Positions 7,269 through 62,430 of a stretch of 64,000 bases of DNA are shown piece after piece (within the stretch, counting starts at the first letter, position 1; every line of letters starts with the position of its first letter). Position numbers and translations under genes: made by a program. The notes under the pieces were generated by a model, which worked only from the letters and a program-made list of their open reading frames with translations, was not told the origin of the DNA and ran no database searches. The stretch is from positions 43,144,211-43,208,210 of the forward strand of contig NC_133623.1 of the NCBI RefSeq assembly GCF_048593235.1, read 5' to 3'. The stretch is from Sminthopsis crassicaudata (Eukaryota).

Positions 7269-7852
7269 ATTTAAATTTAAATAATTGGAAAGACATTGAG
7301 TGCTCTTGGATAGGCCGAGCGAATATAATAAAGATGACAATACTCCCCAAACTAATCTATTTATTTAGTGCTATACCAATCAGACTCCCAAGAAACGATT
7401 TTAATGACCTAGAAAAAATAACAACAAAATTCATATGGAAGAATAAAAGGTCGAGAATTGCAAGGGAACTAATGAAAAAAAAGTGAGATGAAGGTGGTCT
7501 AGGTGTACCTGATCTAAAGCTATATTATATAGCAGCAGTCACCAAAACCATTTGGTATTGGCTAAGAAATAGACCTGTCGATCAGTGGAACAGATTAGGT
7601 ACAAAGGACAAAAAAGGATACATCTATAGCAATCTAGTCTTTGACAAACCCAAAGATACCAACATTAGGGATAAAAATTCATTATTTGAAAAAAACTGTT
7701 GGGAAAACTGGAAATTAGTATGGCAGAAACTAGGCATGGGCCCACATTTAACACCACATACTAAGATAAGACCAAAATGGGTCCATGATTTAGGCATAAA
7801 GAACTAAATCATAAATAAATTAGAGGAACATAGGATAGTTTACCTCTCAGAC

Positions 7853-8722: not shown

Positions 8723-10670
8723 TGGAAGTGGATATCTTCAACATAAAGAAGATCCAACTCACTTCCAGTTGATCAATGATGGACAGAAATAACTACACCC
8801 AGAGAAGGAACACTGGGAAGTGAATGTAAATTGTTAGCACTACTGTCTATCTACCCAGGTTACTTATACCTTCGGAATCTAATACTTAACGTGCAACAAG
8901 AAAATTGGATTTACACACATATATTGTATCTAGGTTATATTGTAACACATGTAAAATGTATGAGATTGCCTGTCATCAAGGGGAGGGAGTAGAGGGAGGG
9001 AGGGGATAATTTGGAAAAATGAATACAAGGGATAATGTTATAAAAAAATTACTTATGCATATACTGTCAAAAAAATGTATAATTATAAAATTTTTAAAAA
9101 TGGAAAAAAAAAGATTTAAGTTTTAAGTTGTTGGCTTAGCGGTAGAGAATTGAGCATATGAATTGGGAAAATTGGGGTTCACATGCCATCTCTGATCCTT
9201 ATGAGCTATGAGATCATGGGGAATTCAGTTAACCTTTTTGAGTGAGTCTCAGTTTTCTTATCTGTAAAATAGAAATTATAAGACATACACTACCCACCTT
9301 ACCCGACTGTCTCGAAGCTAAAATGGAAAAAATGTGTGGACACGCTTTGTAAACTAAGTGCTTTATAGATGTCAATTATTATTACATAGACCCATCTATC
9401 TGGGCACATCACTGGAGAGGCTGCACACAAAAAGACTCATTGTCTCATCTTTGGATAGTAGTGAAACCCCAAGATAATTAAGTTAAGCATTAGATTTTAC
9501 CACCCTCAAATAGATCATTACTTCTGAACCAGTTCAACTATCATGAGACCTACTGAGCAAAGACTTGTATTCAACTGGGAAAGAAGAAACTCATTGCTTG
9601 ACTTTTAATAGATTCCAAATTTTGCATGACCAGGCAATGGAATCTGAAGAATTTGCTCCCTCTCAGAGTCTGGTTTGATAAGACCGGGGAGGTTATGAGA
9701 TAGGAGGTTCCCAGGACTTTAGGACCAGCACGCACTTGGCTTTCAGTGTATATTCAGTTATTTATAATCTGTTTGACCTTAAGAGACTCTCAGTTTCTCC
9801 AACTGCTAAAAAAGAAAAAAAAAAAAAAGATTAGTCTATGTTAATTTAAAAGGCTACTTCTAGCTCTAACATTTTTCTAGCTAATCTTCAGTCTAATATG
9901 TTGCATAACAATTGCTGGATTTCCTCAGTTATTTAAAGTAACCTGCATTGAATGTTTTATTATGGTAATGTGAAGTGGTTTTGTTCTTAATGAATAGTTG
10001 GGAGAATATGTAGAAATGAGAGGCCTTTCAGTTTCAAACACACAAGGACCCCTGATAAGCCCACTCACTGATATGCCCACAAAGAGTGCCAGGTCTCCAA
10101 ACATTGTTGCTGATAACCCAGCATCACAATCTCGGCATTTATCCACGTACTTCTGCATTCCTAGGATATCATAAAAAAGTTGAACTTAAACAGTATAGCC
10201 CTGGCCTTACAATGGCTGCCTTCTGTAGTGGGAGAAGGGGGAGAGGTGAACCAGAACCTTCCAAAGTAGTGGTTCCTTAGAGATATCTGTGCCTGGAGCA
10301 GCACCGCAGCTTAAAGGCCTGCAGATACTCACAGTGAATAACCAATCATGGCAAGCACTTAAAATGAATTCACATCCTTCCTGTCCTGATATTGCTTTGG
10401 CTTTTGTTTCAGAACTAGACTTCTGTCTCTGCCTCAGATTCCAAGACTTAGGATCATCAGCCTAGAGCCACAAGGGGACCTCAAAAACCATGTAGTTCAA
10501 CCCCTCTTCACTATACAGAGGAGGAAACTGGGGCCTGGGAAATTTAAGGAGCTTGTCCAAGGCAACACTTCACTTTGTTTTATTTTTAATTTATTTAAAA
10601 TGTTCTTTTTTCCCCGGTTACATGCAAAAAAAAAAATATTTTAACCTAAGTTTTTAAAACTTTGAGTTCC

Positions 10671-22945: not shown

Positions 22946-23089
22946 NNNNNNNNNNNNNNNNNNNNNNNNNNNNNNNNNNNNNNNNNNNNNNNNNNNNNNN
23001 NNNNNNNNNNNNNNNNNNNNNNNNNNNNNNNNNNNNNNNNNNNNNNNNNNNNNNNNNNNNNNNNNNNNNNNNNNNNNNNNNNNNNNNNN
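22946..23089. other. Assembly gap (144 N)
   Basis: N run, preceded by a T-run. Confidence 1.
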
Positions 23090-24030: not shown

Positions 24031-24429
24031 TTAAAACAGCCAGTAGAAAAGCAAGGCTAAAGCCATGCTTACTACCACAATATTTGGGCCTAGTCCAATG
24101 TGACTTGGACCTGGTGAACCAGCATTGCAGAGTTCCCCACTGCAGCAGTACGTGATGAAGTTATAAGTGATTCCCATGTAATCAACAAGTTGCTCCTTTC
24201 CGCAGTTGGTCGCCTCCACACAGCCTTTGTTGATGATGTAGGAGATTCCACTGGCTACACCTCGGCCCTGGTAGCAGTCTTCTTCCTTTCCACAGTACAT
24301 TGGGATGCCTATACAGTTTGGAGTGTTGGTCAGATCACAGTAGTAGCAGCTCTTGGCAACTACCAGCGGAGTCAGGATGGCAGCGAAAAGAAGGCCCAGA
24401 AAAACAAAGTGCCTGCAGCCCATAATCAT
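24031..24429 (-). CDS. SPACA4: Sperm acrosome-associated protein 4 / Bouncer-family Ly6-uPAR GPI-anchored protein (132 aa, single coding exon)
   Basis: Signal peptide (MIMGCRHFVFLGLLFAAILTPLVVA), 10-Cys LU domain ending CCSGELCN, hydrophobic GPI-type C-terminus. Family motifs CG.EEDC..G.GVA.G...INKGC..AT.CG.E..V.Y.G.TY...T.CC.G.LCN align without gaps to human SPACA4 as I recall it (about half identical; from memory, not a database search). Orthologue versus paralogue is unresolved. Confidence 0.92.
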   Translation of the reverse strand: MIMGCRHFVFLGLLFAAILTPLVVAKSCYYCDLTNTPNCIGIPMYCGKEEDCYQGRGVASGISYIINKGCVEATNCGKEQLVDYMGITYNFITYCCSGELCNAGSPGPSHIGLGPNIVVVSMALALLFYWLF

Positions 24430-26494: not shown

Positions 26495-26637
26495 NNNNNN
26501 NNNNNNNNNNNNNNNNNNNNNNNNNNNNNNNNNNNNNNNNNNNNNNNNNNNNNNNNNNNNNNNNNNNNNNNNNNNNNNNNNNNNNNNNNNNNNNNNNNNN
26601 NNNNNNNNNNNNNNNNNNNNNNNNNNNNNNNNNNNNN
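26495..26637. other. Assembly gap (143 N)
   Basis: N run, immediately followed by the head of an antisense SINE. Confidence 1.
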
Positions 26638-29219: not shown

Positions 29220-29320
29220 AAAAGAGGAGGAGGAGGAGAAGAAGGAGAAGGAGGAGGAGGAGGAGGAAAAAGAGGAAGAAGAGAAAGAAGAGAAAGAAAA
29301 AGGAGCAGCAGAAGAAAAAC
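29220..29320 (+). repeat. Polypurine (GAG/GAA)n tract
   Basis: aaagaggaggaggaggagaagaaggagaaggaggaggaggaggaggaaaaagaggaagaagagaaagaag. Confidence 0.9.
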
Positions 29321-30594
29321 CAACAGTGATCAGAATTGTGATTTTTTTGTAGGCTATCTACTCTAAGATGAGGAAACTGCCTCAATACTGACAGACACCT
29401 TTTCTCATATTAACTTTCTGTCTTTAAGAGTTGCCCAGAGCACTGAGAAGTTAAGTGACTTGTCCAGAGTCACATCACTAGTAGATGTCAGAGGCAGGAC
29501 TACCCTGAGTCTAAACCTTGGTTACTACTACACCTTGGTCACCTTTCAGTAATAAAAAGAATGGTTATTTATGATTACTTTGGCTGACCTCAACTACATA
29601 TTAGAAGAATGCAATCTGATTGAAATAATCATAAGTGGAACTGGGGGGGCAGGGTGGAGCATTGGGAGGTTCCCTCCCCAGTGGTATTTGCAAGTCAAAG
29701 CAGTCAATGTCATTAAGAGCCAATTCAGTCCCCTAAGGCCAAGGTGACACACTGGGATACACCAGAAGGGAAACAGGAAAGAAGGGATTTCAGGGAAGGG
29801 AGTGGCCCGCACAATTCCTCCTTTTGGATATGAAAAGGGATTTGGGGCATCAATTAGGGAATCCATTTAGAGAGAAAGAGGACCTGAAAGGGAGAAGATA
29901 TGAGAACCAGACAGTGAGGGGTTTTCAATGCTAGACTGATGCTTGAGGCAGTGGGAAGTCACTTAAGACTTTCCCTACTGGAATATGACAAAGGTCAAGT
30001 GTTAACCCCAAAGCCTAAGAAGTGGAATTTTCCTTTAGTGGGAGAGATTTTGAGAGATGTGCTTCCTGGCTCTCATAGCTCACAGCTGCCTCGCCCAGTC
30101 TTCCCACTCAGAAGGCCAAGCCCAAGGTCAGAATTGTTGGGCTTCTCCCAGCTTCTGTTTCCCCAACTGAGCCTGAGCAAGACCCTTAACTTCTCGTTCT
30201 TTTATAAGAACACAGATGCCTGCCTCCATGGCCAAGCTTAGAAAATTATTTTTTGGGAACAGAATCTTGAGAAGCATCACATTTTCCGGGGCCACACATA
30301 CAAATTGAAGATATATGAGGCTAGCCTGGGCCTTCACAAGCCATCTGAGGACTTTAAGAGCACTGAGAAGAGGACTGCTAAAGATCCCTCCACCCTAAGA
30401 CTCTGGATTCACATGTGAGAAGAGCTCTTAAAGATCCCTCCTCATTGAGGCTTGCTGTGTCTCAGGATCAGTAATATATCTTCTCTAAAATCTAAGAGAA
30501 GAAATATTCTATTCTGAGGCCAGAAGACTTTAGAATCATTGAGGAGGTTATTAGAACACAAACACTCTAAGGTCCGGGGACCTTAAAATTATTG

Positions 30595-31198
30595 CTATAA
30601 GAGATACAAAGAGAAATTTCATTTAAAATAACCGTCCAGGAGGCAGCTAGGTGGCACAGTGGATAGAGCACCAGCCTTGAATTCAGGAAGACCCGAGTTC
30701 AAATCTGATCTCAGACACTTAACACTTCCTAGCTGTGTGACCTGAGCAAATCACTTAACCCCAGCCTCAGAGAAAAAAAATAAATAAATAAAGTAACTGT
30801 CCATAATATAAAATATTTGGGAGTCTATCTGCTAAGGGAAAGTCAGGAATTATATGAACAAAATCACAAAACATTTTCCACACAAAGTCAGATCTAAACA
30901 GCTGGAAAAAGATCAAGTGCTCATGGGTAGGCCGAGTGAATAATAATAAAATACTACCTAAATTAATTTGCTTATTCAGTGGCATACCAATCTAGACTAC
31001 CAAGAAATTATTTTACCAAGCTAGAAAAAAATAATAAAGTTCATCTGGAAGAACAAAAGGTCAAAAATTTCAAGGGAACTAATGAAAAACATACAAATGA
31101 AGGTGATGAGGTGTGAGGTAGCCTAGCTGTGCCAGATCTAAAACTATAGTATAAAGCAACAGACATCAAAACCATTTGGTACTGGCTAAGAAATAGAT
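30595..31198 (+). mobile_element. Internal L1 ORF2 fragment (no 3' end), split by a SINE
   Basis: Homologous to 7135-7575 of the L1 above (gagatacaaagagaaatt...aaaatatttggga...catttggtactggctaagaaataga). Confidence 0.85.
30638..30789 (+). mobile_element. Marsupial CORE-SINE (WSINE1-like), full length
   Basis: ggcagctaggtggcacagtggatagagcaccagccttgaattcaggaagacccgagttcaaatc with A-tail; TSD aaaataaccgtcc / aaagtaactgtcc. Confidence 0.92.
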
Positions 31199-31321
31199 TC
31201 CTCTGCTCTTGGGCCCTGTGTTTAAATGTCAGAAGATTTTGTAAATACCCTTTTGCTTTGGGCTTTTTGTCTTTATATGTGAGAATTTTTAATGATCCCT
31301 TCACAGTTCAGGCAGTAAATT

Positions 31322-31943
31322 ATTTTTTTATTATAGCTTTTTATTTGCAATTTATATGCATGGGTAATTTTTCAGCATTGATAATTGCAAAACCTTTTGT
31401 TCCAATTTTTCCCTCCTTCTTCCCACCCCCTCCCCCAGATGGCAGGTTGACCAATACATGTTAAAAAAGTTAAAGTATAAGTTAAATACAATTTATGTAT
31501 ACATGTCCAAACGGTTATCTTGCTGTACAAAAAGAATCGGACTTTGAAAGAGTGTACAATTAGCCTGTGAAGGAAGTAAAAAATGCAGGAGGACAAAAAT
31601 AGAGGGATTGGGAATTCTATGTAGTGGTTCATAGTCATCTCCCAGAGTTCTTTCACTGCGTGTAGCTGGTTCAGTTCATTACTGCTCTGTTGGAACTGAC
31701 TTGGTTCATCTCATTGTTGAAGAGGGCCACGTCCATCAGAACTGATCATCATATATTATTGTTGTTGAAGTAGATAATGATCTCCTGGTCCTGCTCATTT
31801 CACTCAGAAGCAGTTCCTGTCAGTCTCTCCAGGCCTTTCTGAAATCCTCCTGCTGGTCATTTCTTACAGAACAATAATATTCCATAACATTCATATGCCA
31901 CAATTTATTCTGCCATTCTCCAATTGATGGGCATCCGTTCAGT
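31322..31943 (-). mobile_element. Antisense L1 3' fragment inserted in the satellite
   Basis: Reverse L1 ORF2 end plus 3'UTR; perfect 15-bp TSD ttcaggcagtaaatt (31307-31321 / 31944-31958). Confidence 0.92.
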
Positions 31944-32061
31944 TTCAGGCAGTAAATTCTTAAAGATCTTTCCAATCTAGAGTACTGTATTCATAGATGA
32001 TATGAGCTCCTTCAAGAGAAGTTCTCTTCAAGAACCCACCACACTTGGGCCTTATGTTCAA

Positions 32062-32203
32062 TTTTTTTTTCCCCTGAGGCAAATGGGGTTGACTCTCCCA
32101 GGGTCACACAACTAGGAAGTGTTAAGTGTCTGAGGTCAGTTTTGAACTAGGGTCCTCCTGATTTCAGGGCTGATGCTCTATCCACTGCGCCACCTAGCTG
32201 CCC
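32062..32203 (-). mobile_element. CORE-SINE (WSINE1-like) inserted in the satellite
   Basis: T-tail...gctctatccactgcgccacctagctgccc; flanking tatgttcaa duplicated. Confidence 0.9.
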
Positions 32204-32421
32204 TACTATGTTCAAATTTAATATGTATTAAGGGTGCTTCTGCAATAGAGCATTATATATAGCAACTCTTTAAAGATCCCTTCACATTGAGGGACTATTT
32301 TCAATCTGAGAAGAGATTAAAGATTACTCTGCATTAGGGCATTGTGTTCAAACATGATCCTTCCACCCTTGGGATCTTTAAGACCTTTAAGAGTAACAAC
32401 TCTTAAATTTCCCTTCATCTG

Positions 32422-33002
32422 ATGAATGTTATGGAATATTATTATTCTGTAAGAAATGACCAGCAGGAGGATTTCAGAAAGGCCTGGAGAGACTTACAGG
32501 AACTGATGCTGAGTGAAGTGAGAAGAACCAGGAAATCATTTATACATGGCAAGAACAAGATTATACATGATCAATTCTGATGGACCGGGCTCTCTTCAAC
32601 GAAATGATTCAAACCACTTCCAATTATTCAGTGATGAAGAGAGCCATGCACATCCAGAGAGAGGACTGTGGGAGCTGAGAGTGGATCACAACATAGCATT
32701 TTCACTCTTTGTTGTTGTGTGCTTCTATTTTATTTTGCTTCTCATCTTTTTTTCTGGTTTGATTTGATTTTTCCTGTGTGGCAAGATAATTGTATAAAAA
32801 TGTATGCATACATTGGATTTAACATATATTTCTACCACGTTCAACAAGTATTAGATGAACTACCTGCCATCTAGAGGAGGGGAGTAGGAGAAGGGGGGAA
32901 AACTGAAACACAAGGTTTTGCAAGGGCTAATGTTGAATAACTGTCCTCGTATGTTTTGAAAAATAAAAAGATTTAATAAAGGAAAAAAATTAAATAAAAA
33001 AA
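32422..33002 (+). mobile_element. L1 3' fragment inserted in the satellite
   Basis: atgaatgttatggaatattat...3'UTR and A-tail; TSD ttcccttcatctg (32409-32421 / 33003-33015). Confidence 0.92.
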
Positions 33003-33232
33003 TTCCCTTCATCTGGAAGGATCGTTAAGAGCTGTTCTCACATATGAACACAGTGCCCTACTGCCGAGGAGTCTGACAGTTCTCTCCTCAGATTGAAAAA
33101 GAGTCCCCAATATACAGGACTCATTAAGAGAATTCTTAAATATCCCTCCACTTTCAGGTACTATTTTCCAATTTGAGGAGAAAATTCTCAAAAATCCCTC
33201 CATACTAGGGCACTATGTTCATATGTGAGAAC

Positions 33233-33380
33233 TTTTTTTTTTTTTTTTTTGCTGAGGCAATTGAGGATAAGTGACTTGCCTAGGATCACACAGATAGTTA
33301 ATTGTTTGAGATCATATTTGAACTCAGATTCTCCTGACTTCAGGGCTGGTACTCTATCCACTGTGCCACCAAACTGCCCC
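33233..33380 (-). mobile_element. CORE-SINE (WSINE1-like) inserted in the satellite
   Basis: Poly-T...ctgacttcagggctggtactctatccactgtgccaccaaactgcccc. Confidence 0.9.
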
Positions 33381-36300
33381 AAGAGCTCTTCTTGCATATG
33401 AACATAGTGACTTAGTGTGGAGGAATCTTTAAGAATTCTCTTATCAGATTGGAAAATAGTCCCCAATGTGCAGAACTCATTAAGAATTCTCACACATGGA
33501 GCCCAAGCATGGAAGGATCTTTAAGCATTTTCATCTCAGATGGAACAACAGTGCCTGAATGAGCAGGGATCTTTGAGTTCTCACATATGAACACAGAGCC
33601 CAAGGGAGGAAGGATCTTTAAGAGTTATTTTTTCAGAATTGTAAATAGTGCCTGAAAGTGGAGTAATATTTAAGAGTTGTGATATGTGAGCATAGAGCCA
33701 CAGGGCAGAAGGATCTTTTAGAGCTTTTCTTCCATATGAACACACTGCCCTAGTGTGGAGGGAATCTTTGAGAATTCTTTGCTCATATTGGAAAATAGTG
33801 CCTGAATGGAGGGATAGTTAAGAGTTCTCACATATGAACAGAGCCCATGTGTGGAATGATCATTAAAAATTTTCTCAAATTTGGATACTGGGACTAGATA
33901 CGGAGGGATATTTAACATCTCTTTTCTCACATATGAACACATTATACAAGCTTGGAGGGACCTTTAAGAGCTCTTCTTGCATATGAACACAGAGCCCAGA
34001 ATCTTTGAGAATTCTCCCCTCAGATTAGAAAATAGTCCCTGAATGTAGAGGGATATTTAAGAGTTCTCACATATGAACACAGAGCCCAAATGGGGAAGGA
34101 TAATTATAAAGTTTTCCCAAACTTGTAAATTGAAGCCTAAAAAGCATAGGGATATTTATTTAACAGCTCTTCCCACTTAAGAACACAGCACTTTAGTATG
34201 GAGGGATTTATAAGAATTCTTTTCTCCAATTGGAAAATAGTCCCTGAATATGGAGGTATCATTAAAAGGTCTCACATATGAACACAGTAAAAAGTCTTCT
34301 CAAATTTGTATTCTGCCACCAAGTGCAGAAGGATCTTGAAAACCTCTCCTCACACAAGAACACAGTGCCCTACTTTGGAAGATTCTTTGGGATTTCTCTC
34401 CTGAGATGTAAAATAATACAGGAATATCTATAAATTCTCAAATATTAATGCAAAACCCAGTTGTGAAAGGATCCTTAAAAAGCCTTTTGAAATTGAGCAC
34501 TTAGCTTATGTGTGCAGAGATATTTAAGAGCTCTTTTCACGTATGAACAGACCACACTAGAAAGGAGGGATCTTGAAAAATTCTCTGCTCGGATTGAAAA
34601 ATAGTCCCCATTAAGGCAGGACTGATTAAGAATTCTCACATATGAACACAGAGACCAAAGGCGAAAGGATCTTTAAGTCCACTTCTCACATATGAACACA
34701 GTACCCTCCTGGGGAGGGATCTTTGAGATTTCTCATCTTAGATAGAAAATAGTGCCTGAATATGGAAGGATATTTAATAATTTTCCCATATTAACACCAA
34801 GACTAGTTGAGGAAGGATCCTTTAAAAGTCTTTGCAATTTTGTGCACTTGGGCTATGTGCGCAAGGATATTTAAGACCTCTTCTCACATGTGAACAGGGT
34901 GCACTATTGGGAAGGGATCTTTGAGATTTCTCACCTTAGTTAAAAAATAGTGCCTGAATGTGGAGGAATATTTAAAAATTTTACCTTATGAAGAGAGAAC
35001 CCAGGTGCAGAAGGATCAGTAAAAAGTCTCTGAAATTTGTATCCTGCCGCCAAGTGAGGAAGGATCTTTAAGACCTCTTCTCAAATAAGAACACAGTGCA
35101 CTACTGGGGAGGAATCTTTAAAATTTCTCACCTTACTTGGGAAATAGTGCCTGAATATGGAAGGATATTTAAGAATTCTCATATATTAATGTCAAGACTA
35201 GTTGAGGAAGGACACTTTAAAAATCTTTTCAATTTTTGTGCACTTGGCCTATATGCGCAGGGATATTTAAGACCTTTTCTCACATATGAACAGTGTGCCC
35301 TAGTGAGGTGCGATCGCGGACAATACTCTCCTCACATTGTAAAATAGCCCAAATAGGCGGGACTCATTAAGACTTCGCACATTTGAACACAGACCAAGGG
35401 TACAGGGATTTTTAAGAATTTTCTCGCTTGTGAACACATGGCCCTGCTGAGGAAGGATCTTTCATATTTCTGTCCTCAGATGGAAAATAGTATCTTAATG
35501 TGGAGGGATATTTGCAAATTCTCCCATATGAAGACAGAACCCAGGTGCGGAAGGATCAGTAAAAAGTCTCTGAAATTTGTATCCTGCCGCCAAGTGAGGA
35601 AGGACCTTTAAGAACTTCTCAAATAAGAACACAGTGCACTACTGGGGAGGGATCTTTGAGATTTCTCACCTTAGATAGAAAATAGTACCTGAATGTGGAG
35701 GGACATTTAAAATTTTACCTTATGAAGACAGAACCCAGGGTGTGGAAGGATCAGTAAAATGTCTTCAGATATTTATGTCCTGCCGCCAAGTGAGGAAGGA
35801 TCTTTAAGACCTCTTTTCACATATGAACACAGGGCACTAGTGGGGAAGGATGTTTGAGATTTCTCCTCTTACATGGAAAACAGTGCCTGAATGTGGAAGG
35901 ACATTTAAGAATTCTCATATATTAATGCCAAGACTAGTTGAGGAAGGACCCTTTAAAAGTCTTTTCCATTTTGTGCACTTGACCTGTGTGCACAGGGGTA
36001 TTTAAGACTTCTTCTCACATATGAACAGGGTGCCCTAGTGAGGTGCGATCATGAACAATACTCTCCTCATATTGTAAAATAGTTCCAAATAGGCGGGACT
36101 CACTAAGACTTCTCACATTTGAACATAGAGCAAGGGTGGAGGGATTTTTAAGAATTTTTCTCGCTTGTGAACACATGTCCCTGCAGAGGATGGATCTTTA
36201 ATATTGCTCTTCTCACATGGAAAATAGTACCTCAATGTGGAGGGATATTTACAAATTCTCCCATATGAAGACAGAACCCAGGTGCGGAAGGATCAGTAAA

Positions 36301-38246
36301 AAGTCTTCAGATATTCATATCCTGCCGCCAAGTGAGGAAGGATCATTAAGACCTCTTCTCACATATGAACACAGTGCACTAGTGTGGAGGGATCTCTAAG
36401 ATTTTTCACTTTACATGGAAAACAATGCCTGAATGGGGAAGGATATTTAAGAAATCTCCCCTATTAAAGCGAAAACTAGTTGAGGAAGGACCTTTTAAAA
36501 GTCTTTACAATTTTTTGCACTTGGCCTACGTGCGCAGGGATATTCAAGACCTTTTCTCACATATGAACTGGGTGCCTAGTGAGGAGCAATCACGGACAAT
36601 ACTCTCCTAACATTGTAAAATAGACCCAAAAAGGCAGGACTCATTAAGACTTCTTACATTTGAACATAGAACAAGGGTAGAGGGATCTTTAAGAATTTTT
36701 CTCGCTTGTGAACACAGGACCCTGCAGAGGATGGATCTTTGATATTGCTCTCCTCACATGGAAAATAGTACCTCAATGTGGAGGGATATTTACAAATTTT
36801 GCCATATGAAGACAGAACCCAGATGCGGAAGGATCAGTAAAAAGTCTTCAGATATTCATATCCTGCCGCCAAGTGAGGAAAGATCTTTAAGACCTCTTCT
36901 CACATATGTACAGTGTGCTCTAGTGAGGTGCAATAGCGGACAATACTCTCCTCACATTGTAAAGTAGTCCCACATAGGCGGGACTCAAGACTTCTCACAT
37001 GTGAACACACACCAAAGGTGGAAGGATTTTAAAGAATTTTTCTCATTTGTGAACATAGGACCCTCCTGAGGAGGGATCTTTCATATTTCTCTCCTCTCAT
37101 GGAAAATAGTGCCTTAATGTGTAGGCATATTTGCAAATTCTTCCATATTAAACATAACACAGGTGTGGAAGGATCAGTAAAAAGTATTCAGATATTCATA
37201 TCCTGCCACCAAGTGAGGAAAGATCATTAAGACCTCTTCTCAGATATGAACACAGTGCACTAGTGGGGAGGGATCTTTGAGATTTCTCACCTTACATGGA
37301 AAATAGTGCCTGAATGTGGAGGGATATTTAAGAATTCTCATTTATTAACGCCAAGACTACTTGAGGAAGGACCCCTTAAAAGTCTTTTCAATTTTGTGCA
37401 CTTGGCCTACGTGCGCAGGGATATTTACGACTTCTCACAATACTCTCCTCACAATGTAAAATAGTCCCAAAAAGGCAGGACTCATTAAGACTTCTCACAT
37501 TTGAACACACACCAAGGGTGGAGAGATTTTTAAGAATTTTTCTCCCTTGTGAACACATGGCCCTGCTGAGGAGGGATCTTTCATACTTCTGTCCTCAGAT
37601 GGAAAATAGTGCCTTAATGTGGAGAGATATTTGCAAATTTTCCCATATGAAGAGAGAACCCAGGTGCAGAAGGATCAGTAAAAAGTCTCTGAAATTTGTA
37701 TCCTGCAGCTAAGTGAGGAAGGACCTTTAAGACCTCTTCTCACATATGAACATAGTGCACTAGTGGGGAGGGATCTTTGAGATTTCTCTCCTTACAAGGA
37801 AAATAGTGCCTGAATGTGGAAGGATATTTAAGAATTCTCACATATTTACACCAAGACTAGTTGAGGAAGGACCTTTTAAAAGTCTTTACAATATTGTGCA
37901 CTTGGCCTATGTGCACAGGGATATTTAAGATCTCTTCTCACATATGAACAGTGTGCCCTAGGGAGGTGCGATTGGGGACAATATTCTCCTCACATTGTAA
38001 AATAGTGCCAAAAAGGCATGATTCATTAAGACTTCTCACATTTGAACACAGACAAGGGTTCAGGGATTTTTAAGAATTTTTCTTGTTTGTGAACATATGG
38101 CCCTGCTGAGGAGGGATATTTGATATATCTCTCCTCCCATGGAAAATAGTGCCTTAATGTGGAGGGATATTTACAAATTCTGCCATATGAAGACAGAACC
38201 CAGGTGTGGAAGGATCAGTAAAAAGTCTCTGAAATTTGTATTTTGC

Positions 38247-38886
38247 CCTTTTCATACTGGCTAGAAACTGGAAAATGAATGCATGCCCATCAATTGGAGA
38301 ATGGTTGAGTAAATTATGATATATGAATGTTATGGAATATTATTGTTCTGTAAGAAATGACCAACAGGAGGAATACAGAGAGGCTTGGAGAGACTTACAT
38401 CAACTGATGCTGAGTGAAAAGAACAGAACCAGAAGATCGCTGTACACTTCAACAACAATACTGTATGAGGATGTATTCTGATGGAAGTGGAAATCTTCAA
38501 CATAAAAAAGAGCTAATCCAGTTCCAATTGATCAATGATGGACAGAATCAGCTACATCCAGAGAAGGAACACTGATTGTGTTCCTTCTTACACAATTGAG
38601 TGTAAACTGTGAGCATTTTTTGTTTTTCTTCCCAGGATATTTTTACCTTCTAAATCCAATTCTTCCTGTGCAACAACAACAACAACATTCATATATCAAA
38701 AAAATTCGGTTCTGGACATATATATTGTATCTAGGATATACTATAACATATTTAATATGTATGGGAATGTCTGCCATCTAGGGGAGGGGGTGGAGGGAAG
38801 GAGGGGAAAATTTGGAACAGAAGGGAGTACATGGAATAATGTTGTAAAAAATTACCTATGCATATGTACTTTTAATAAAAAAAAAA
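38247..38886 (+). mobile_element. L1 3' fragment inserted in the satellite core
   Basis: ccttttcatactggctagaaactgg...A-tail; TSD gaaatttgtatt(t/c)tgc (38231-38246 / 38887-38902). Confidence 0.92.
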
Positions 38887-40799
38887 GAAATTTGTATTCT
38901 GCTGCCAAGTGCAGAAGGATCTTTAAGACCACTTCTCACATATGAACACAGTCCACTAGTGGGGAGGGATCTTTGAGATTTCTCACCTTAGATGGAAAGT
39001 AGTACCTGAATGTGAAGGATATTTAAGTATTCTCACATATTAACAGCAAGTCTACTTGAGGAAGGACCCTTTAAAAGTCTTTACAATATTTTTCACCTGG
39101 CCTATGTGCACAGAAATTTTTAAGAGCTCTCCTGACATATGAACAGAGTGCCCCTAGTGAGGTGCGATCGCGGACAATACTCTCCTCACATTGTAAAATA
39201 GCCCAAATAGGCGGGACTCATTAAGACTTCTCATATTTGAACACAGACCAAGGGTGCAGGGATTTTTAAGAATTTTTCTCGCTTATGAATACATGGCCCT
39301 GCTGAGGAGGGATTTTTGTCATTTCTTTTCTCGCATGGAAAATAATGCCTCAATGTGGAGTGATATGTTACAGTTCTCTCATATCAACACAGAATCCCTT
39401 TGCAAATGGATTAGTAAAATTCTTCTCACATTGGTTCATGGGGACTAAGTTTTTAGGAATATTTAAGAGCTTCTCTCACTTCTGAAGGGAATATCCTAGT
39501 GCTGAGGGATTGTGAGAATTTTCTTTTCAAATTGGAAAATAGTGCCTGAATGTGGAGGAATATTTACAAATTCTCGCATATGAAGACAGAACCCAGATGC
39601 AGAAGGATCAGTAAAAAGTCTTCTGAAATTTGTATACTGCTGTCAAGAGTGGAAGGATCTTTAAGACCTTCTCACATAAGAACACAGAGCCCTACAGTGA
39701 AGGGATCTTTGAGATTTCTCTTCTTAGTTGGAAAACAGTAAAGGAATGTGTATAGATATTGAACAATTCTCACATATGATCACCCAGCCCAGTTGGGGAA
39801 GAACCTTAAAAACACTTTTCAATATTGTGCCCTGGGCCTACATGTGCAGGGATATTTAAGAGCTCTTCTCACATATGAAAAGAAAGCACTAGTGAGGATG
39901 GATCTTGGAGCATTCTCTTCTCAGATTGAAAAATAGTCCCTAATAAGGCAGGACCGATTAAGAATTTTCACATATGATCACAGGGACCACTGGTGCCTCT
40001 TCTCACATATTACACAATGCCATCCTGGGGAGGGATCACTGAGATTTCTCACCAGAGATGGAAAATAGTGCCTGAATGTTGAGGGATATTCACACATTCT
40101 CACATATGAAGACAGAACCCAGGTGCAGAAGGATCAGTAAAAAGTCTTCTGAAATTTGTATACTGCCACCAAGTGCAGAAGGATCTTTAAGACCTCTTCT
40201 CACATAAGAACACAGAGCCCTATAGTGAAAGAATCTTTCAGATTTTTCTCCTCAAATGGAAAATAGTACAGGAATGTGGAAGGATATTTAACAATTCTTA
40301 CATATGACCACCAGCCCAGTCACGGAAGGACTCTTAAAAAGTCTTTTCAATTTTATGCACTTGGTCTACTTGTGCAGGGATATTTCAGACCTCTTCTCAC
40401 ATATGAACAGAGTGCACTAGTAAGGCAGGATCTTGGAAAATTCTCTCCTTGAATTGAAAAATAGTCCCCCAGAGGCAGGATTCATTAGGAATTCTCATAT
40501 ATGAATACAGAAACCAATGGTGGAAGGACCTTTAAGACCTCTTCTCACATATGAACACAGTGTGCTACTGGGGAGGGATCTTTGAGATTTCTCACCTAAG
40601 ATGGAAAATAGTGCATGAATGTGGAAGGATATTTAAGAATTCTCAAATATTAATGCAGAACCCAGTTGCAGAAGCATCGTTAAAAAGTCTTCTCAAATTT
40701 GTTTACTGGGTCTCTGTGTGCAGGGAATTTAAGAGCTTGTCTCACTTCTGAACCCTGTGTCCTAATGTGGAGGGGGACCTTTGAGAATTTTCTTTTCAG

Positions 40800-41100
40800 G
40801 AACACTGGGAAGTGAATGTAGATTGTTAGCACTAATGTCCATCTACCCAGGTTACTTATACCTTCGGAATCTAATACTTAACATGCAACAAGAAAATTGG
40901 ATTTACACACATATGTTGTATCTAGGTTATATTGTAACACATGTAAAATGTACGGGATTGCCTGTCATCTAGGGGAGGGAGTGGAGGGAGGGGGGGGATA
41001 ATTTGGAAAAATGAATACAAGGGATAATGTTATAAAAAAAATTACTCATGCATTTATACTGTCAAAAAGAATTTATAATTATAAAATTAAAAAAAAAGAT
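40800..41100 (+). mobile_element. Short L1 3'UTR inserted in the satellite
   Basis: Near-identical to 8810-9110; TSD aattttctt(t/c)tcag (40786-40799 / 41101-41114). Confidence 0.92.
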
Positions 41101-41428
41101 AATTTTCTTCTCAGATTGGAAAATAGTGTCTGAATGTGGAGGGATATTTAACAGTTCTCACATATCAACACAGAACCCAACTGTGGAAGGATCGTCAAAA
41201 TTATTCACAAATTTGAACACTCGGACCAAATGTGGAAGGATCTTTAAGACCTCTTCTCACATATGAACACAGTGCCCAAATGCAGAGGGATCTTTGAGAA
41301 TTTACTTCTCAGACTGGGACATAGTTGGTGAATGTGCAGGGATTTTTACAGGTTCTCACATATAAACACAGAAGCCAAGGTAGTAGGGATTTTAAAAATT
41401 CTTTTCTCAGATTTGAAAATAGTACTTG

Positions 41429-41841
41429 CACATGGCTCTCTTCAACAATGTGATGAACCAAATCAGTTTCATTTGTTCAATAATGAATAGAACCGGCTAC
41501 ACCCAGTGAAAGAACTCTGGAAAATGAATGTGACCATACATAGCATCTCCAATCCCTCTATTTTTGTCTGCCTGAATTTTTGATTTTCTTCACAGGTTAA
41601 GTGTACATTATTTCAAAGTCTGATTCTTCTTGTGCAGCAAAATAATTGTATGGATATGTATACATATATTGTATGTATCATATACTTTAACATATTTAGC
41701 ATGTATTGGTCTGACTGCCATCTAGGGGAGGGGGTGGTGGGAAGGGGGGAAAAGTTGGAACAAAAGGTTTGGCAATTGTCAATGCTGTAAAATTACCCAT
41801 GCATATATCTGGTAAATAAAAAGCTACAATAAAAAAAGAAA
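41429..41841 (+). mobile_element. Older-type L1 3'UTR inserted in the satellite
   Basis: catggctctcttcaacaatg...ctggtaaataaaaagctacaataaaaaaa; degraded TSD gaaaatagtacttg / gaaagtagtgcctg. Confidence 0.85.
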
Positions 41842-43295
41842 GAAAGTAGTGCCTGAAAATTTAGGAATCATTAAACATTGTTACATATGAACACACAACA
41901 ACAGGGTGGAAGGATTTTTAAGACTTCTTCTCGCTTATGAACAATGGGCCCTCCTGCAAAGGATTTTTGAGATTTCTTTCCTCAAATGGGAAATAGAGCT
42001 TGAATGTGGAGGTTTATTTAAGAATTCTCACATATGAACACAGAGTCTAGGTGTGGAAGGATGTCCTTTCAAATTTGTACACTGGGGACAAGTGCAGAGG
42101 GATATTTAAGAGCTCTTCCCACATATGAACACAGTGCCCTACTGTGGAGTGATCTTTGAGAATGTGCTTCTCAGACTGGCAAATAGTTCCTGAATGTGCA
42201 GGGATCTTTAACTATTTTCACATATCAACATAGTGCCCTATTGCGGAGGGGGTCTTTAAGAATTATCTCCTCAGATTGGATAGTAGTGCCTGAATGTGGA
42301 GGGATATTTAAGAATTGTTTTCTATGAGCACATAGCCCAAGGGTGGAAGGATTTTTGAGGGCTCTTCTCATATTTGAACACAGTACCCTAGTGGATGAAA
42401 TTTTGACAATTGTCTTCTCAGATTGGAAAATAGTGCCTGAATGTAAAGGGATATTAAGAGTTATCACATATGAACACAAAGCACACGTGTGGAAGGATCT
42501 TTAAAAAGTCTTCTCAAATTTATACACAAGGCCTAACAGCGTAGAGATATTTAACAGTTCTTCTCACATATACACCTAGTGCCCTACTAAGTAGGATCTT
42601 TACAAATTCTCTCCTCAGACTTGAAAATGGTACCTGAGTGTGGAAGGATCTTTAAGACTTCTCACATATGAATACTCTGCCGAGGGATGGAGGGATTTTT
42701 AAGAGCTTTTCACATATGGACACAGTGCTCTAGTGCAGAGGGAGTTTTAAGAATTCTTTTTTCCAATTGGAACATAATCCCTGAATTTGGAAGGATCTTT
42801 TAAATTTATCACATATGAACACAGTCCCTTAGTAGAAAAGGATCTTTAAGAATACTCTCCTCAAATTGGAAAATGTTCCCTGAAAGTGCAGTGAGCTCTA
42901 AGAGTTGTCACATATGAACAGAGTCCAAGTGGGGGAAATTCAAGAGTTCTTCTCAGATTTTAATAGAGCACCCAAGGGCAGAGGCATCTTGATCTTGCAG
43001 AACTCTTCTCCTATATGAACACAGTGACTAATCATGGAGGGATCTTTAATAATTCTTTTCTCAGATTGGAAAATAGTCCCTGAATGTGGAGGAGTATTTA
43101 AGAGTTTTCACATATAAACATTGTGCCCCGTGGTGAAGTGCTTTTTAAGAGCTCTTTTCACATATGAACACAGTGTGGAGTACTTGGGCTCTGTGTTCAA
43201 GTTTGAGAAGAGCTTTTAGCTATCCCTCCACACTATGGCTTGTATAGTCTGATAACACTTACATATCCCTCCATATTCAGGGGAAGAGAATTCTT

Positions 43296-43452
43296 TTTTT
43301 AAATTTGCATTTCTTTAATCAATGGCAATTTAGAGTATTTTTTCATATGACTAAAAATGGCTTTAATTTCCTCATTTGAAAATTGTTCATATCCTTTGAC
43401 CATTTATCACCTGGGGAATAGCTTATACTCTAGTAAACTTTGAGTCAATTGA
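43296..43452 (-). mobile_element. Internal L1 ORF2 piece with short A-tail, inserted in the satellite
   Basis: Reverse complement matches 8060-8215 (gataaatggtcaaaggatatgaac...gaaatgcaaatt); perfect TSD gaagagaattctt (43283-43295 / 43453-43465). Confidence 0.85.
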
Positions 43453-44589
43453 GAAGAGAATTCTTAATGGTTCCTCTGCACTGGGGCCCTGTGTTCATAT
43501 GTGACAAGAGCTCTTGAAGATCCCTCCTCACTTGGGCACTATTTTCATATCCTAAGGTTTGGAGACATAGATTTTCTCCTCCATAATGTGAGGCCCTCAA
43601 AGAACAGGGAACAACATGGATCCCCCCTTATTGGCCAAACAAACTGTGGAGTATGGATGCAATGTAATGACTCCAGCACATGAAACAGTCACTAGAAGAA
43701 TTTAAGGAACCACAAGGAGATTTGTATAAACTGTCTCAGAGAGGAATAAACTCAGCCAAAATAGTATACACAAAGCAGCCGCAGTGCTTGATACAAAGTA
43801 AGCACTTAACGAATGCCTATAGATGGACTGATTGACTACAACAATAAGTATAATACTAAAATGGAGCCCAAAACTGAATCATTACTCAGCTTGGCCCAGA
43901 GAGTTAGGGAACTATGGGTGCAGAACGTTGCACATAGTATCGGATGTAGTTGCTTGTCAAATGGTTTTCTTTAGCTTTTTAAAAGCAAGAGAGAATCCAT
44001 GAGAGGGGCTGTAGAAATGATTATAATATAAAAATGAAAGGCACCAATAGTAAGTACCTTGAGCAGCAATGTGGGGGGGGGGGCTTCATTTGAGTGCAGT
44101 GATTTGCCTATAGTCACACATAAAACAAGCAATGAACTCACATCTTCCGTTCTGATCCAGTAGCTCAGTTCTACCCTACTGCCCAAGCGTTCCACCTATT
44201 GTAACCTTCAAAGGCAGAGAAGGGAAGACTCTGGCGTAATAAGACTGCTCATCTGGAAGGGGTGAGATTCCATGAAAAAACAAGGCAATTTGCTCAAGGG
44301 AGGAGATGCAGTCCCAGAAACCACTCCTCAAACAAACACTTTTCTCCAGCCTCCCATAAAACTTCTGCAGCTCAATCCCATGAAGTCATCCAGAAATACC
44401 CTGGGTCACTGACAAGGTCACATGACTCAGAGCAAAATGGGACATTCAACTCCTAAACTATGCAGATTCCAGCTCATCTTGGCTCCAGCAGAGCAGAGCC
44501 ATTCAAATAGAAAGCAATTCAGAGAAGCGCAGCATCTCTGGACTGGGAAGAGACTCCAAGGCATTGGGTCCGACCCATTCCCAACCCAG

Positions 44590-60189: not shown

Positions 60190-62430
60190 TTTAAAAAAAT
60201 AATAAGCTTTTTATTTTCAAAATACATGCAGAGATAGTTTTCAACATTCACCCCTGCCAAACCTCTCTCCTTTCCCCTACCCCCCTCCCTAAACAGCAGG
60301 TAATCCCATATAGATTAAACATGTATAATTTTTCTAACATATTTCCATATTTATCCTGCTGCACAAGAAAAATCAAATCAAAAAAATTAGAAAGAAAAAG
60401 CAATCAAACAACAAAAAGGGTGAAAATACTCTGTTAGGATCCACACTCAGTTCCCTCAGTGCCCTCGCTGTGTGTAGATGGCTCTCTTCATCACAAGACC
60501 ATTGGAACTGGTCTGAATCATCTCACTGTTGAAAAGAATCAAGCCCATCAGAGTTGATCATCGTATAGTCTTATTGTTGCTGTGTACAAGATCTAGTTCT
60601 GCTGATCTGATGTAGCATCAGACCTCTCTGAAATCATCCTGCTGGTTGTTTCTTACAGAACAATAATATTCCATAACATTCATATACCACAATTTACCCA
60701 ACCATTCTCCAATTGATGGGCATCCACGTAGTTTCCAGTTTCTGGCCACTACAAAGAGGGCTGCCACAAACATTCTTGCACATATGAGACCCTTTCCCTT
60801 TTTTAAGATCTCTTTGGGACTTCTGGGGGCAGAGGCAAGATGGCAGAGATGACATTTGTTTCTCTCTGACCTTCTCTATTAATTAGCCAATTACCCTCAG
60901 ATTAATTAGCCAATCCAGCCTCTGAATTAGCTCTGGACTGGCAAAACCCACAAATATTGGGAATGTGACAAATTACTAGCAGAAGATAATTTTGTGACCA
61001 GCAGGATGATTTCAGAAAGGCCTGGAGAGACTGACATGAACTGATGCTGAGTGAAATGAGCAGGACCAGGAGATCATTGTATACTTCAACAATAATACTA
61101 TATGGTGATCAATTCTGCTGGACGAGGCCCTCTCCAACAATGAGAGGAACCAAATCAGTTCCAATAGAGCAGTAATGAACTGAACCGGCTCCACTCAGTG
61201 AAAGAACTCTGGAAGATGATTATGAACCACTTCATAGAATTCCCAATCCCTCTATTTCTGTCCGCCTGCATTTCTGATTTCCTTCACAGGCTAATTGTAC
61301 ACTGTTTCAAAGTCCGATTCTTTTTGTACAGCAAAACAACTGTTTGGACATGTATATATACACATATATATTATATTTAATTTATATTTTAATATATTTA
61401 ACATGTATTGGTCAACCTGTCATCTGGAGGAGGGGGGTGGGGAAGAGGGGAAAAGCTGGAATGAAAGGTTTGGAAATTGTCAATGCTGAATTACCCATGC
61501 ATATATCTGGTAAATGAAAAGCTATGATAAAAAGGATATATTTGATTTTTCAAAAAAAAAAAAAAGAAAGAAAGAAAGAAAGAAAGAAAGAAACAACCAG
61601 CAGAGAGCCTGGAGAGACTTACAGGAACTGATGCTAAGTGAAATGAGTAGAACCAGAAGATCATCATATGTGACAACAAGCAGACTATGCAATGATCAAT
61701 TCTGATGGACGTGACTCTCTTCAACAATGAGGAGATTCAGACCAGTTCCACTTGTTCAGTGATGAAGAGAGCCACGGGTACCCACAAAGAGAACCATGGA
61801 AACAGAGTATGGACCATGGCATAGCATCTCACTCTCTCTGTTGTTATTTGTTTGCATTTTATTTTCTTTCTCAGTTTTTTCTTCTCTTCCTTTTAATCTG
61901 ATTTTTCTTGTGCAAAAAGGTAACAGTATAAATATGTATACATATATTGGATTTAACATGTATTTCAAACATATTTAACATGTATGGGACTACCTGCCAT
62001 ATGGGGGAGTGAGTGAAGGGAAGAAAGGGAAAAGTTGGAACAGAAGATTTTGCAAGGGTCAATATTGAAAAATTACCCATGTATATGTTTTGTCAATAAA
62101 AAGCTTTAATTAAAAAAAAAAATCTCTTTGGGATACAGGCCCAGTAGAGAGACACTGCTGGATCAAAAAGTTTTGCGAGCCCTTTTGGGCATAGTTCCAG
62201 ATTGCTCTCCAGAATGGTTGGATCAGTTCACAACTCCACCAATAATAGTCTCCTAGTTTTCCCCACATCCCCTCCAACATTGGTCATTACCTTTTCCTGT
62301 CATAGCCAATCTGAGAAGTGTGAGGTGGTACCTCAGGGCTGCCTTAATTTGCATTTCTCTGCTCAACAGTGAGTTAGAGCATTTTTCCTATGACTAGAAA
62401 TGGCTTTAACTTCTTGTTCTGATTTAATTT
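60190..62430 (-). mobile_element. Antisense L1 3' fragment nested in the element above, itself split at 60820-62121
   Basis: Reverse 3'UTR/ORF2 end 60190-60819 resumes at 62122 (atctctttggga|tacaggcccagtag...gcatttctct). Confidence 0.8.
60820..62121 (+). mobile_element. Composite L1: 5' terminus fused to the ORF2 end/3'UTR, plus a second 3'UTR
   Basis: Starts cttctgggggcagaggcaagatggcagag; jumps at ~60995 to gaccagcaggatgatttcag; first tail 61550-61592; second 3' end 61600-62121. Perfect TSD atctctttggga (60808-60819 / 62122-62133). Confidence 0.8.

What the first reader, a model, noticed from the sequence alone, without database searches (positions are those of the whole stretch)
30330..43550. 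13-kb interstitial satellite with nested higher-order structure beside a gamete gene
Four related 47-51-bp monomer types (a-d) form a ~197-bp tetramer, and a trimer plus two tetramers form a ~540-bp 11-mer. The landmark gaggtgcgatc-cggacaatactctcctcacattgtaaaatag recurs near 35305, 36040, 36580, 36925, 37435, 37960 and 39160 (seen). The hierarchy resembles alpha-satellite HOR organisation, but in a short array ~6 kb from a gene. I do not recognise the family; it may be an undescribed marsupial satellite. Monomers are rich in short palindromes (CATATG, GTGCAC, ACTAGT, GAATTC, GATC), so it could be a protein-binding array or a repeat-RNA template (inference).
Basis: partly seen in the sequence, partly recalled or inferred. 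Interest (0 to 1): 0.78.

Follow-up and report, generated by a model that had tools for sequence, protein, structure and literature searches.

The report
Old single-locus tandem repeat with decayed higher-order units
A real block of about 10 kb of 50-letter repeats with a nested 4-unit and 11-unit pattern sits about 6 kb upstream of a sperm-protein gene in a marsupial genome. It looks like one old, decaying local array, not a genome-wide satellite, and nothing found here points to a function.

Summary
From 30363 to 43550 the window carries about 180 copies of a 47-52-bp monomer and none elsewhere. Monomers form an ABAC tetramer (197-198 bp). In the core (35278-39672), a trimer plus two tetramers form a ~541-bp 11-mer. 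All seven landmark positions were recovered.

The alpha-satellite comparison holds only for form:
- The seven higher-order units vary in size (7, 10, 11 and 15 monomers) and are only 79-93% identical.
- Nearest-copy identity falls from ~0.91 in the core to ~0.79 at the edges.
- Both ends carry inverted monomers.
- The block holds ten interspersed-repeat insertions, two checked as L1 3' ends with poly-A and target-site duplications.
- CpG depletion equals that of the flanks.

In an independent DNA sample, exact contigs cover many units at uniform depth (~47-69). Summed depth per bin matches the self-similarity of this one locus, while the L1 inserts sum to millions. So the family is low-copy and probably confined to this locus. 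Two other coded organisms hold ~83-88% similar pieces.

I found no evidence for RNA structure, an Rfam family, CENP-B boxes or transcription. Catalogue status (Dfam/Repbase) could not be tested. Verdict: an ordinary, old, locus-specific tandem array; low interest.

The parts
30363..33231 (-). Left arm. About a dozen degenerate monomers in the opposite orientation to the core (one + strand monomer at 33036-33072), broken up by SINE and L1 fragments.
   Evidence: nhmmer hits on the - strand. Inverted matches to the core of about 74-82% over about 100 nt. The intervening pieces have copies elsewhere in the window.
33391..43175 (+). Main head-to-tail array of 47-52-bp monomers, about 165 copies. 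The order runs from degenerate AB dimers to ABAC tetramers, then the higher-order core, then ABAC/AB units again.
   Evidence: Start-to-start spacing of 46-53 bp or multiples of it. Type string. Nearest-copy identity of 0.79 at the edges and 0.90-0.92 in the centre.
34634..35277 (+). Run of ABAC tetramers, 197-198 bp each.
   Evidence: TRF period 197/198, 75-79% matches. Lag-4 identity 0.74 and lag-8 identity 0.81.
35278..39672 (+). Higher-order core of seven units. Starts and sizes: 35278 (15-mer, 735 bp), 36013 (11-mer, 542 bp), 36555 (7-mer, 343 bp), 36898 (10-mer, 497 bp), 37395 (11-mer, 541 bp), 37936 (11-mer, 540 bp without the L1 insert) and 39132 (11-mer, 541 bp).
   Evidence: Landmark spacing of 735, 541, 344, 497, 541 and 1196 bp. 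Pairwise unit identity 79-93%. The four monomer types of the tetramer are 55-67% identical.
38244..38887 (+). L1 3'-end insertion with a poly-A tail and a 12-bp target-site duplication, GAAATTTGTATT, at 38231-38242 and 38888-38899.
   Evidence: 79% match to the L1 3' end at 8492-9075. Sequence read directly. Summed contig depth in the millions.
40800..41100 (+). Younger L1 3'-end insertion with an A-rich tail and a 14-bp target-site duplication at 40786-40799 and 41101-41114 (one mismatch).
   Evidence: 93.6% match to 8806-9100. Sequence read directly.
41427..41879 (+). Interspersed-repeat fragment inserted in the array. It has copies elsewhere in the window and I did not classify it.
   Evidence: 82% matches to 31284-31735 (inverted) and 61126-61533.
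43182..43550 (-). Right arm. Three to four inverted monomers after a head-to-head junction at about 43178, interrupted by an interspersed-repeat piece at 43302-43419.
   Evidence: nhmmer - strand hits. Inverted matches I13, I17-I24. Sequence read directly. for the inserted piece.
24031..24429 (-). Context only. A single-exon Ly6/uPAR ORF of 132 aa, SPACA4-like. Its start codon faces the array, which lies about 5.9 kb upstream.
   Evidence: Pfam UPAR_LY6 at E 1e-4, just under the curated cut-off. The nearest Atlas clusters are named SPACA4, score 0.95, TM 0.69-0.73.

Best explanation
This is an old, non-coding tandem-repeat array that is probably confined to this one locus.

It grew by successive rounds of unequal exchange or segmental amplification. 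The steps were a ~50-bp monomer, an AB dimer (~99 bp), an ABAC tetramer (197-198 bp), an 11-mer unit (~541 bp, with 7-, 10- and 15-mer variants from out-of-register exchange), and finally a few larger duplications (offsets of 2659 and 3854 bp). Amplification was most recent in the centre, which leaves older, more diverged monomers at the edges. Both ends were inverted.

Homogenisation then largely stopped. Units drifted to 79-93% identity, CpGs decayed to the genomic background level, and L1 and SINE elements inserted. Related sequence in two other coded organisms implies that the array predates their split from this species.

The most likely present role is none beyond bulk intergenic DNA upstream of the SPACA4-like gene. 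The repeat structure, the insertions and the low copy number are shown. The order of amplification steps and the neutrality are inferred.
For: **Structure.**
- Monomer hits occur only inside 30.3-43.6 kb.
- Periods are 50, 99, 197 and 541 bp, with identity peaks at lags 4, 7, 11 and 15.
- The type string is ABAC ABAC DBA. Units are 79-93% identical against 55-67% between monomer types.

**Age gradient.**
- Nearest-copy identity is 0.90-0.92 in the core and 0.79-0.80 at the edges.
- There is no insertion in 33.4-38.2 kb, but seven in the 3-kb left arm (six TE fragments within 30.6-33.0 kb plus the SINE at the arm/core junction, 33234-33378).

**Decay.**
- The longest exact internal repeat is only 79 bp.
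- CpG observed/expected is 0.164, against 0.166 in the flanks.
- Two L1 3' ends carry poly-A tails and target-site duplications.

**Real and low-copy.**
- An independent DNA sample, X4, from another study has contigs of 340-533 bp with 0-2 differences over seven different parts of the array, each at depth 47-69.
- Summed depth per 200-bp bin is 5-219 for the array and 1e6-2e7 for the L1 inserts.
- Depth divided by 52 per bin (0.1-4.2) is in the same range as the number of >=85% self-matches within this window (1-5).

**Shared with relatives.** Coded organisms B and C hold pieces of 100-132 nt that are about 83-88% identical. One 1,214-bp contig of C matches twice, 584 bp apart.

**Not coding, not a known RNA.**
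- No ORF of 90 aa or more lies in the + core.
- No Rfam family matches.
- RNA folding z-scores are +0.27 and -0.36.
Against: - Copy number rests on contig depths, which the tool warns are not copy numbers. No unique flank was laid as a single-copy control, so a second copy of the whole block elsewhere is not excluded.
- Positions that are shared by all 11 monomers of the unit also show fewer differences among the seven units: 8.5% against 12.8%, Spearman -0.39, permutation p 0.003. This could mean weak constraint. Conversion between monomers or uneven mutation rates would give the same result.
- A 79-bp identical tract that includes three CpGs links units that are otherwise 83% identical. This suggests some late conversion or constraint.
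- Expression in testis or germline was not tested.
Confidence: 0.74

Rival explanations
1. It is an interstitial outpost of a genome-wide, for example centromeric or pericentromeric, satellite family of this marsupial.
For: The tandem monomers, higher-order units and young-core/old-edge layering resemble centromeric satellites. The catalogues (Dfam/Repbase) and the rest of the genome could not be searched.
Against: - Array bins have summed contig depth of 5-219, against millions for the L1 inserts in the same runs. That depth is explained by the self-similarity of this locus alone.
- The rest of the 64-kb window holds no copy.
- No CENP-B-box periodicity.
- Units are only 79-93% identical and carry TE insertions.
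Confidence: 0.06
2. It is a functional multi-site DNA platform, a binding array for a sequence-specific protein (a zinc-finger repressor, or a bHLH factor at CATATG). It would act as a heterochromatin, insulator or regulatory block upstream of the SPACA4-like gene.
For: - The conserved monomer core is TCTCA..AT..G...GGAxGGAT.TTTAA.
- Positions conserved across monomers change less among units.
- A related array is present in two other organisms.
- The tetramer length of 197 bp is close to a nucleosome repeat length. That comparison is my inference.
Against: - The effect is small (a ratio of 0.66) and is also expected from inter-monomer conversion or uneven mutation.
- The array tolerates L1 and SINE insertions and 7-21% divergence between units.
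- CpG decay equals the flanks, and the window holds no CpG island.
- Similarity to the relatives (83-88%) is not shown to exceed neutral expectation.
- The palindrome excess follows from amplifying one monomer.
Confidence: 0.09
3. It is a template for repeat RNA: a repeat domain of a long non-coding RNA, or a source of small RNAs. The inverted arms could give double-stranded RNA.
For: Inverted monomer arms flank the + core. Runs X7-X10, guessed to be RNA, hold 17-43% of the sampled words.
Against: - The share held by X7-X10 falls broadly with run size. They give exact contigs at depth 3-8 across 26 of 30 bins and carry the L1 signal in a similar proportion to the DNA run, which looks like low-coverage DNA.
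- Other guessed-RNA runs of similar size hold only 3-6% of the words.
- No fold-energy signal on either strand and no Rfam match.
- The arms are only 74-82% complementary over about 100 nt.
- At 39% GC the composition is unlike the GC- and poly(C)-rich Repeat 1 of marsupial RSX described in PMC6633197.
Confidence: 0.05
4. It is an assembly artefact: a repeat that was falsely expanded or mis-joined.
For: Repeats are error-prone in assemblies. No single contig or long read spanning several units was available.
Against: - Units differ by 7-21%, so they are easy to tell apart.
- An independent sample from another study reproduces unit-specific sequence, with 0-2 differences in 340-533-bp contigs at seven places and at uniform depth.
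- The retrotransposon insertions have intact target-site duplications.
- The array holds no N runs.
Confidence: 0.02

Closest known systems
Primate alpha-satellite higher-order repeat arrays
   Same: Head-to-tail monomers that are about 55-67% alike are grouped into multi-monomer units that are more alike. Unit-length variants differ by whole monomers or tetramers. A younger core sits between older, more diverged edges.
   Different: - The monomer is about 50 bp, not 171 bp.
- About 10 kb at low copy, not megabases at centromeres.
- Units are 79-93% identical, not about 95-100%.
- No CENP-B-box pattern.
- Pierced by L1 and SINE insertions.

The alpha-satellite figures are from general knowledge.
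Single-locus minisatellites (VNTRs with 10-100-bp units)
   Same: The unit length is about 50 bp. The array is about 10 kb, apparently at one locus, non-coding, and shaped by unequal exchange.
   Different: - Classical minisatellites, from general knowledge, are GC-rich, highly homogeneous and hypervariable. This array is 39% GC and its monomers are only about 60% alike.
- It has three nested period levels.
- It shows no length or sequence difference in the parts covered by a second individual.
Non-centromeric arrays with higher-order structure and locus-specific macrosatellites (e.g. DXZ4, D4Z4)
   Same: A locus-specific tandem block near genes, with units of a few hundred bp.
   Different: No gene, CpG island or ORF lies in the unit. 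The units are much more diverged. No CTCF-type evidence is available. The macrosatellite features are from general knowledge.
Marsupial RSX lncRNA repeat domains (Repeat 1 is about 13 kb)
   Same: A block of short tandem repeats of about 13 kb in a marsupial genome (PMC6633197).
   Different: RSX Repeat 1 is described as GC-rich and poly(C)-rich. This array is 39% GC. Its neighbour is a SPACA4-like gene, and no transcription is shown.

Membership tests
Satellite DNA with higher-order repeat organisation (alpha-satellite type) | Head-to-tail tandem monomers | tested here: met
   About 165 + strand monomers, spaced 46-53 bp or multiples of that.
Satellite DNA with higher-order repeat organisation (alpha-satellite type) | Multi-monomer units much more alike than the monomers within a unit (typically 95% or more between units) | tested here: inconclusive
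   Units are 79-93% identical against 55-67% for monomers. The hierarchy is present, but unit identity is far below that of actively homogenised arrays.
Satellite DNA with higher-order repeat organisation (alpha-satellite type) | High copy number: long arrays or many loci | tested here: not met
   Summed contig depth is 5-219 per bin, against 1e6-2e7 for the L1 inserts. That depth is explained by the copies at this locus. Contig depth is only a rough measure.
Satellite DNA with higher-order repeat organisation (alpha-satellite type) | Centromere association (CENP-B box, CENP-A chromatin) | tested here: not met
   The CENP-B-box core pattern gives 4 matches in the window, 2 in the array, each with a mismatch and with no periodicity; 1.5 are expected by chance. 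CENP-A binding cannot be tested here.
Single-locus minisatellite / VNTR | 10-100-bp unit, 0.5-30-kb array, one locus | tested here: met
   47-52-bp monomers and about 9.6 kb net. Single-locus status is inferred from depth.
Single-locus minisatellite / VNTR | GC-rich, homogeneous units and length hypervariability | tested here: not met
   GC is 0.39 and neighbouring monomers are about 60% identical. Length polymorphism is not testable with short contigs.
Transposable-element-derived tandem array | Monomer or unit homologous to part of a known element | tested here: inconclusive
   Monomer and tetramer profiles give no significant hit to any SINE or L1 piece in the window once the array is masked. 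Dfam and Repbase were not available.
lncRNA repeat domain (RSX-like) | Transcribed, with GC- or poly(C)-rich protein-binding motifs | tested here: not met
   39% GC and CpG-depleted. No run shows transcription. RSX Repeat 1 composition is taken from PMC6633197. Transcription itself is not fully testable here.

The most novel reading that the evidence does not exclude
The array is a conserved binding platform. A sequence-specific DNA-binding protein would recognise the invariant monomer core (TCTCA...GGAxGGAT.TTTAA, with CATATG in one monomer type), and selection would have kept about 180 sites upstream of the SPACA4-like fertilisation gene since before the split of several dasyurid lineages. 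On this reading, the lower recent substitution rate at core positions reflects purifying selection and not conversion.
Probability: 0.07. Interest if true: 0.55.

Novelty: new member of a known kind. Interest (0 to 1): 0.2.

Why it matters
As it stands it matters little. Locus-specific tandem arrays with traces of higher-order structure are common in mammalian genomes, and this one looks neutral and decayed.

It does have modest value as a small, fully assembled example of a repeat hierarchy. It records how such a hierarchy is built (dimer, tetramer, 11-mer, with unit variants that differ by whole monomers or tetramers). It also records how the hierarchy ages once homogenisation stops (edge-to-core gradient, retrotransposon insertions, CpG decay). 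If the array is orthologous across dasyurids, it could serve to time those steps.

It would become interesting only if a bound factor, a transcript or above-neutral conservation were shown.

Tried and rejected
- **Metagenome scan.** I scanned for two CACATATGAA(CA) words spaced 180-210 bp apart. It returned 120 contigs. None matches the monomer profile. They carry an unrelated tandem repeat of about 21 bp that happens to contain the word. This says nothing about the family.
- **Scan notes by sequence.** The look-up gave nothing.
- **CENP-B box.** No periodic match.
- **Rfam.** At gathering threshold over the whole window, 0 matches.
- **RNA folding.** One 541-nt unit was folded on both strands: z +0.27 and -0.36, so no structure signal.
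- **Origin from an element in the window.** Profiles searched against the array-masked window gave only a monomer edge that I had mis-assigned to an insert.
- **Coding tandem repeat.** Rejected. The periods of about 50 and 541 bp are not multiples of 3, and the + core has no long ORF.
- **RSX-like lncRNA repeat.** Rejected on composition and context.
- **Transcription from the 'RNA?' runs.** Not accepted.
- **Literature.** No paper describes this repeat or prints its core words.
- **A fuzzy-regex landmark search** timed out and was replaced by blastn-short.

Full report
**1. Is it there?**

Yes. Repeated 12-mers rise from about 10-50 per kb in the flanks to 250-640 per kb between 33 and 43 kb. 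A monomer profile built by iteration from one 50-bp seed finds 148 copies, and 184 after refinement. All lie within 30.3-43.6 kb apart from one weak hit near 15.3 kb.

Successive monomer starts are 46-53 bp apart, or multiples of that. K-mer offset spectra peak at 50, 99, 197/198 and 540-542, and also at 500, 526, 736, 1278 and 2659. TRF reports only patches, with periods of 50, 99-100, 195-198 and 341, because most copies are under about 80% alike.

**2. Anatomy**

I tiled 176 + strand monomers. Mean identity is about 0.60-0.62 at most lags and peaks at lags 4, 7, 11 and 15. Clustering gives the string ...ABAC ABAC DBA..., where D is the landmark monomer.

The higher-order part is short and irregular. 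It holds seven units:

| Start | Monomers | Length (bp) |
|---|---|---|
| 35278 | 15 | 735 |
| 36013 | 11 | 542 |
| 36555 | 7 | 343 |
| 36898 | 10 | 497 |
| 37395 | 11 | 541 |
| 37936 | 11 | 540 (L1 insert removed) |
| 39132 | 11 | 541 |

The 15-mer and 7-mer differ from the 11-mer by one whole tetramer and the 10-mer by about one monomer, as out-of-register exchange would give.

Units are 79-93% identical. The four monomer types of the tetramer are 55-67% identical. A few longer duplications exist, for example 34866-35588 against 37525-38247 at 87%.

On either side of the core lie ABAC tetramers and then degenerate AB-type monomers. The identity of each monomer to its best match elsewhere falls from 0.90-0.92 in the core to 0.79-0.80 at the edges.

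Both ends are inverted. Sparse minus-strand monomers occupy 30363-33231. A head-to-head junction at about 43178 is followed by minus-strand monomers up to 43550.

**3. Interruptions**

The stretches that are not monomers have copies elsewhere in the window. These include copies next to an L1 reverse-transcriptase ORF at 6423-7268. One insert begins with the tRNA-like head that I recognise from memory as typical of marsupial SINEs.

Two inserts were read at base level:
- 38244-38887 ends in poly-A and is flanked by the 12-bp duplication GAAATTTGTATT.
- 40800-41100 ends in an A-rich tail and is flanked by a 14-bp duplication with one mismatch.

These are therefore retrotranspositions into an existing array, not part of the repeat unit. 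Seven of the ten inserts lie in the 3-kb left arm (six within 30.6-33.0 kb plus the SINE at the arm/core junction, 33234-33378). None lies in 33.4-38.2 kb, which fits old edges and a younger core. Net repeat DNA is about 9.6 kb of the 13.2-kb span.

**4. Real, and how many copies?**

Twenty public runs hold all or part of the stretch, from ten studies. I laid 35000-40999 on four of them.

- **Independent confirmation.** X4 is DNA of the same coded organism from a different study than the best holder. It has contigs of 340-533 bp with 0-2 differences over seven different places in the array, each at depth 47-69. The unit-specific sequences therefore exist in a second sample at uniform depth.
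- **Copy number.** Summed depth per 200-bp bin is 5-219 in the array, against 1e6-2e7 in the L1 inserts. Dividing the array depth by 52 gives 0.1-4.2 per bin. That is the same range as the number of >=85% self-matches that the window's own array provides, 1-5. The family is therefore low-copy and probably confined to this locus.

Caveat: contig depth is a rough measure, and no unique flank was laid as a control.

**5. Relatives**

Runs of two other coded organisms, B and C, give array pieces of 100-132 nt that are about 83-88% identical. One 1,214-bp contig of C matches twice on the same strand, 584 bp apart. A related array with a period of similar scale therefore exists in other species, and the array predates those splits.

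Other agents' notes name this genome as the fat-tailed dunnart, a dasyurid. I did not verify this. The SINE head fits a marsupial.

If the roughly 14% mean divergence between units is neutral, the last amplifications are tens of millions of years old. This is an inference that depends on an assumed mammalian rate of about 1-2e-9 per site per year.

**6. Function tests**

- **Coding.** No ORF of 90 aa or more lies in the + core, and the periods are not multiples of three.
- **RNA.** No Rfam family matches in the window. One unit folded as RNA gives z-scores of +0.27 and -0.36.
- **CpG.** Observed/expected is 0.164, against 0.166 in the flanks, and the window holds no CpG island.
- **CENP-B box.** The pattern does not recur.
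- **Palindromes.** Palindromic hexamers are enriched, 23 against 14 per kb. CATATG alone accounts for 44 of them, which is what copying one monomer produces.
- **Transcription.** Runs guessed to be RNA (X7-X10) hold 17-43% of the words. The share falls broadly with run size. They give exact contigs at depth 3-8 in 26 of 30 bins, with the L1 signal in similar proportion to the DNA run. Other guessed-RNA runs of similar size hold 3-6%. I read X7-X10 as low-coverage DNA, so transcription is not shown. It is not excluded either.

**7. Two small unexplained signals**

- Monomer positions that are the same in all 11 monomers of the unit consensus also differ less among the seven units: 8.5% against 12.8%, Spearman -0.39, permutation p 0.003. 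A first version of this test was partly circular.
- The longest exact internal repeat is a 79-bp tract that contains three CpGs. It links units at 35298 and 39152 that are otherwise 83% identical.

Both fit occasional gene conversion between monomers or units. They would also fit weak constraint, and I cannot separate the two.

**8. Comparison and verdict**

In form this is a miniature, fossil version of a higher-order satellite array. By copy number and size it is a single-locus minisatellite-like block. It fails the copy-number, homogeneity and centromere features of alpha-satellite-type satellites, and the GC-rich and homogeneous features of classical minisatellites (see the membership table).

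It is not like the 13-kb Repeat 1 of marsupial RSX, which is GC- and poly(C)-rich (PMC6633197). I found no paper that describes it or prints its core words. Dfam and Repbase were not available, so 'uncatalogued' remains untested.

The neighbouring ORF at 24031-24429 on the minus strand is a Ly6/uPAR protein. Its nearest Atlas clusters are SPACA4. The array lies about 5.9 kb upstream of its start codon, and nothing links the two functionally.

Verdict:
- The hierarchy reading is correct.
- The satellite-family and function readings are not supported.
- This is an ordinary feature of low interest.

Noticed in passing
window 35298-35376 and 39152-39230: A 79-bp exact identity that includes three CpGs links two higher-order units that are otherwise about 83% identical. 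This is longer than I would expect at that divergence. It may be a gene-conversion tract.
   Followed up: partly
window 35278-39672 (unit alignment): Positions conserved across all 11 monomers of the unit show fewer differences among the seven units (8.5% against 12.8%, rho -0.39, p 0.003). The cause could be conversion, uneven mutation or weak constraint, and it is unresolved.
   Followed up: partly
window 6423-9100: An L1 element. The reverse-transcriptase ORF (Pfam RVT_1, E 6e-49) is followed by a further ORF (7853-8722) and by sequence up to about 9100. Several fragments inside and beside the array match its downstream part, 8492-9100, at 79-94%.
   Followed up: partly
window 24031-24429 (-): A single-exon Ly6/uPAR ORF of 132 aa. 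Its nearest protein-atlas clusters are named SPACA4. The scan has already noted it separately (s1-153593).
   Followed up: partly
window 29224-29267: A (GAG)n microsatellite of 14.7 copies, about 1.1 kb left of the array.
   Followed up: no
window 22946-23089 and 26495-26637: Two N runs of 144 and 143 bases flank the SPACA4-like ORF region.
   Followed up: no
loci L001-L120 (JGI metagenome contigs, e.g. Ga0105051-55, Ga0209491, Ga0335398): The two-word pattern hit more than 120 contigs. They share an unrelated tandem repeat of about 21 bp (unit like GTCACATATCAATGAGTCAT, about 77% alike between contigs), probably from one abundant organism in those samples.
   Followed up: partly
window 1-64000: No 500-bp window reaches CpG-island criteria. 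The highest CpG observed/expected value is 0.42, so the whole window is CpG-poor.
   Followed up: yes
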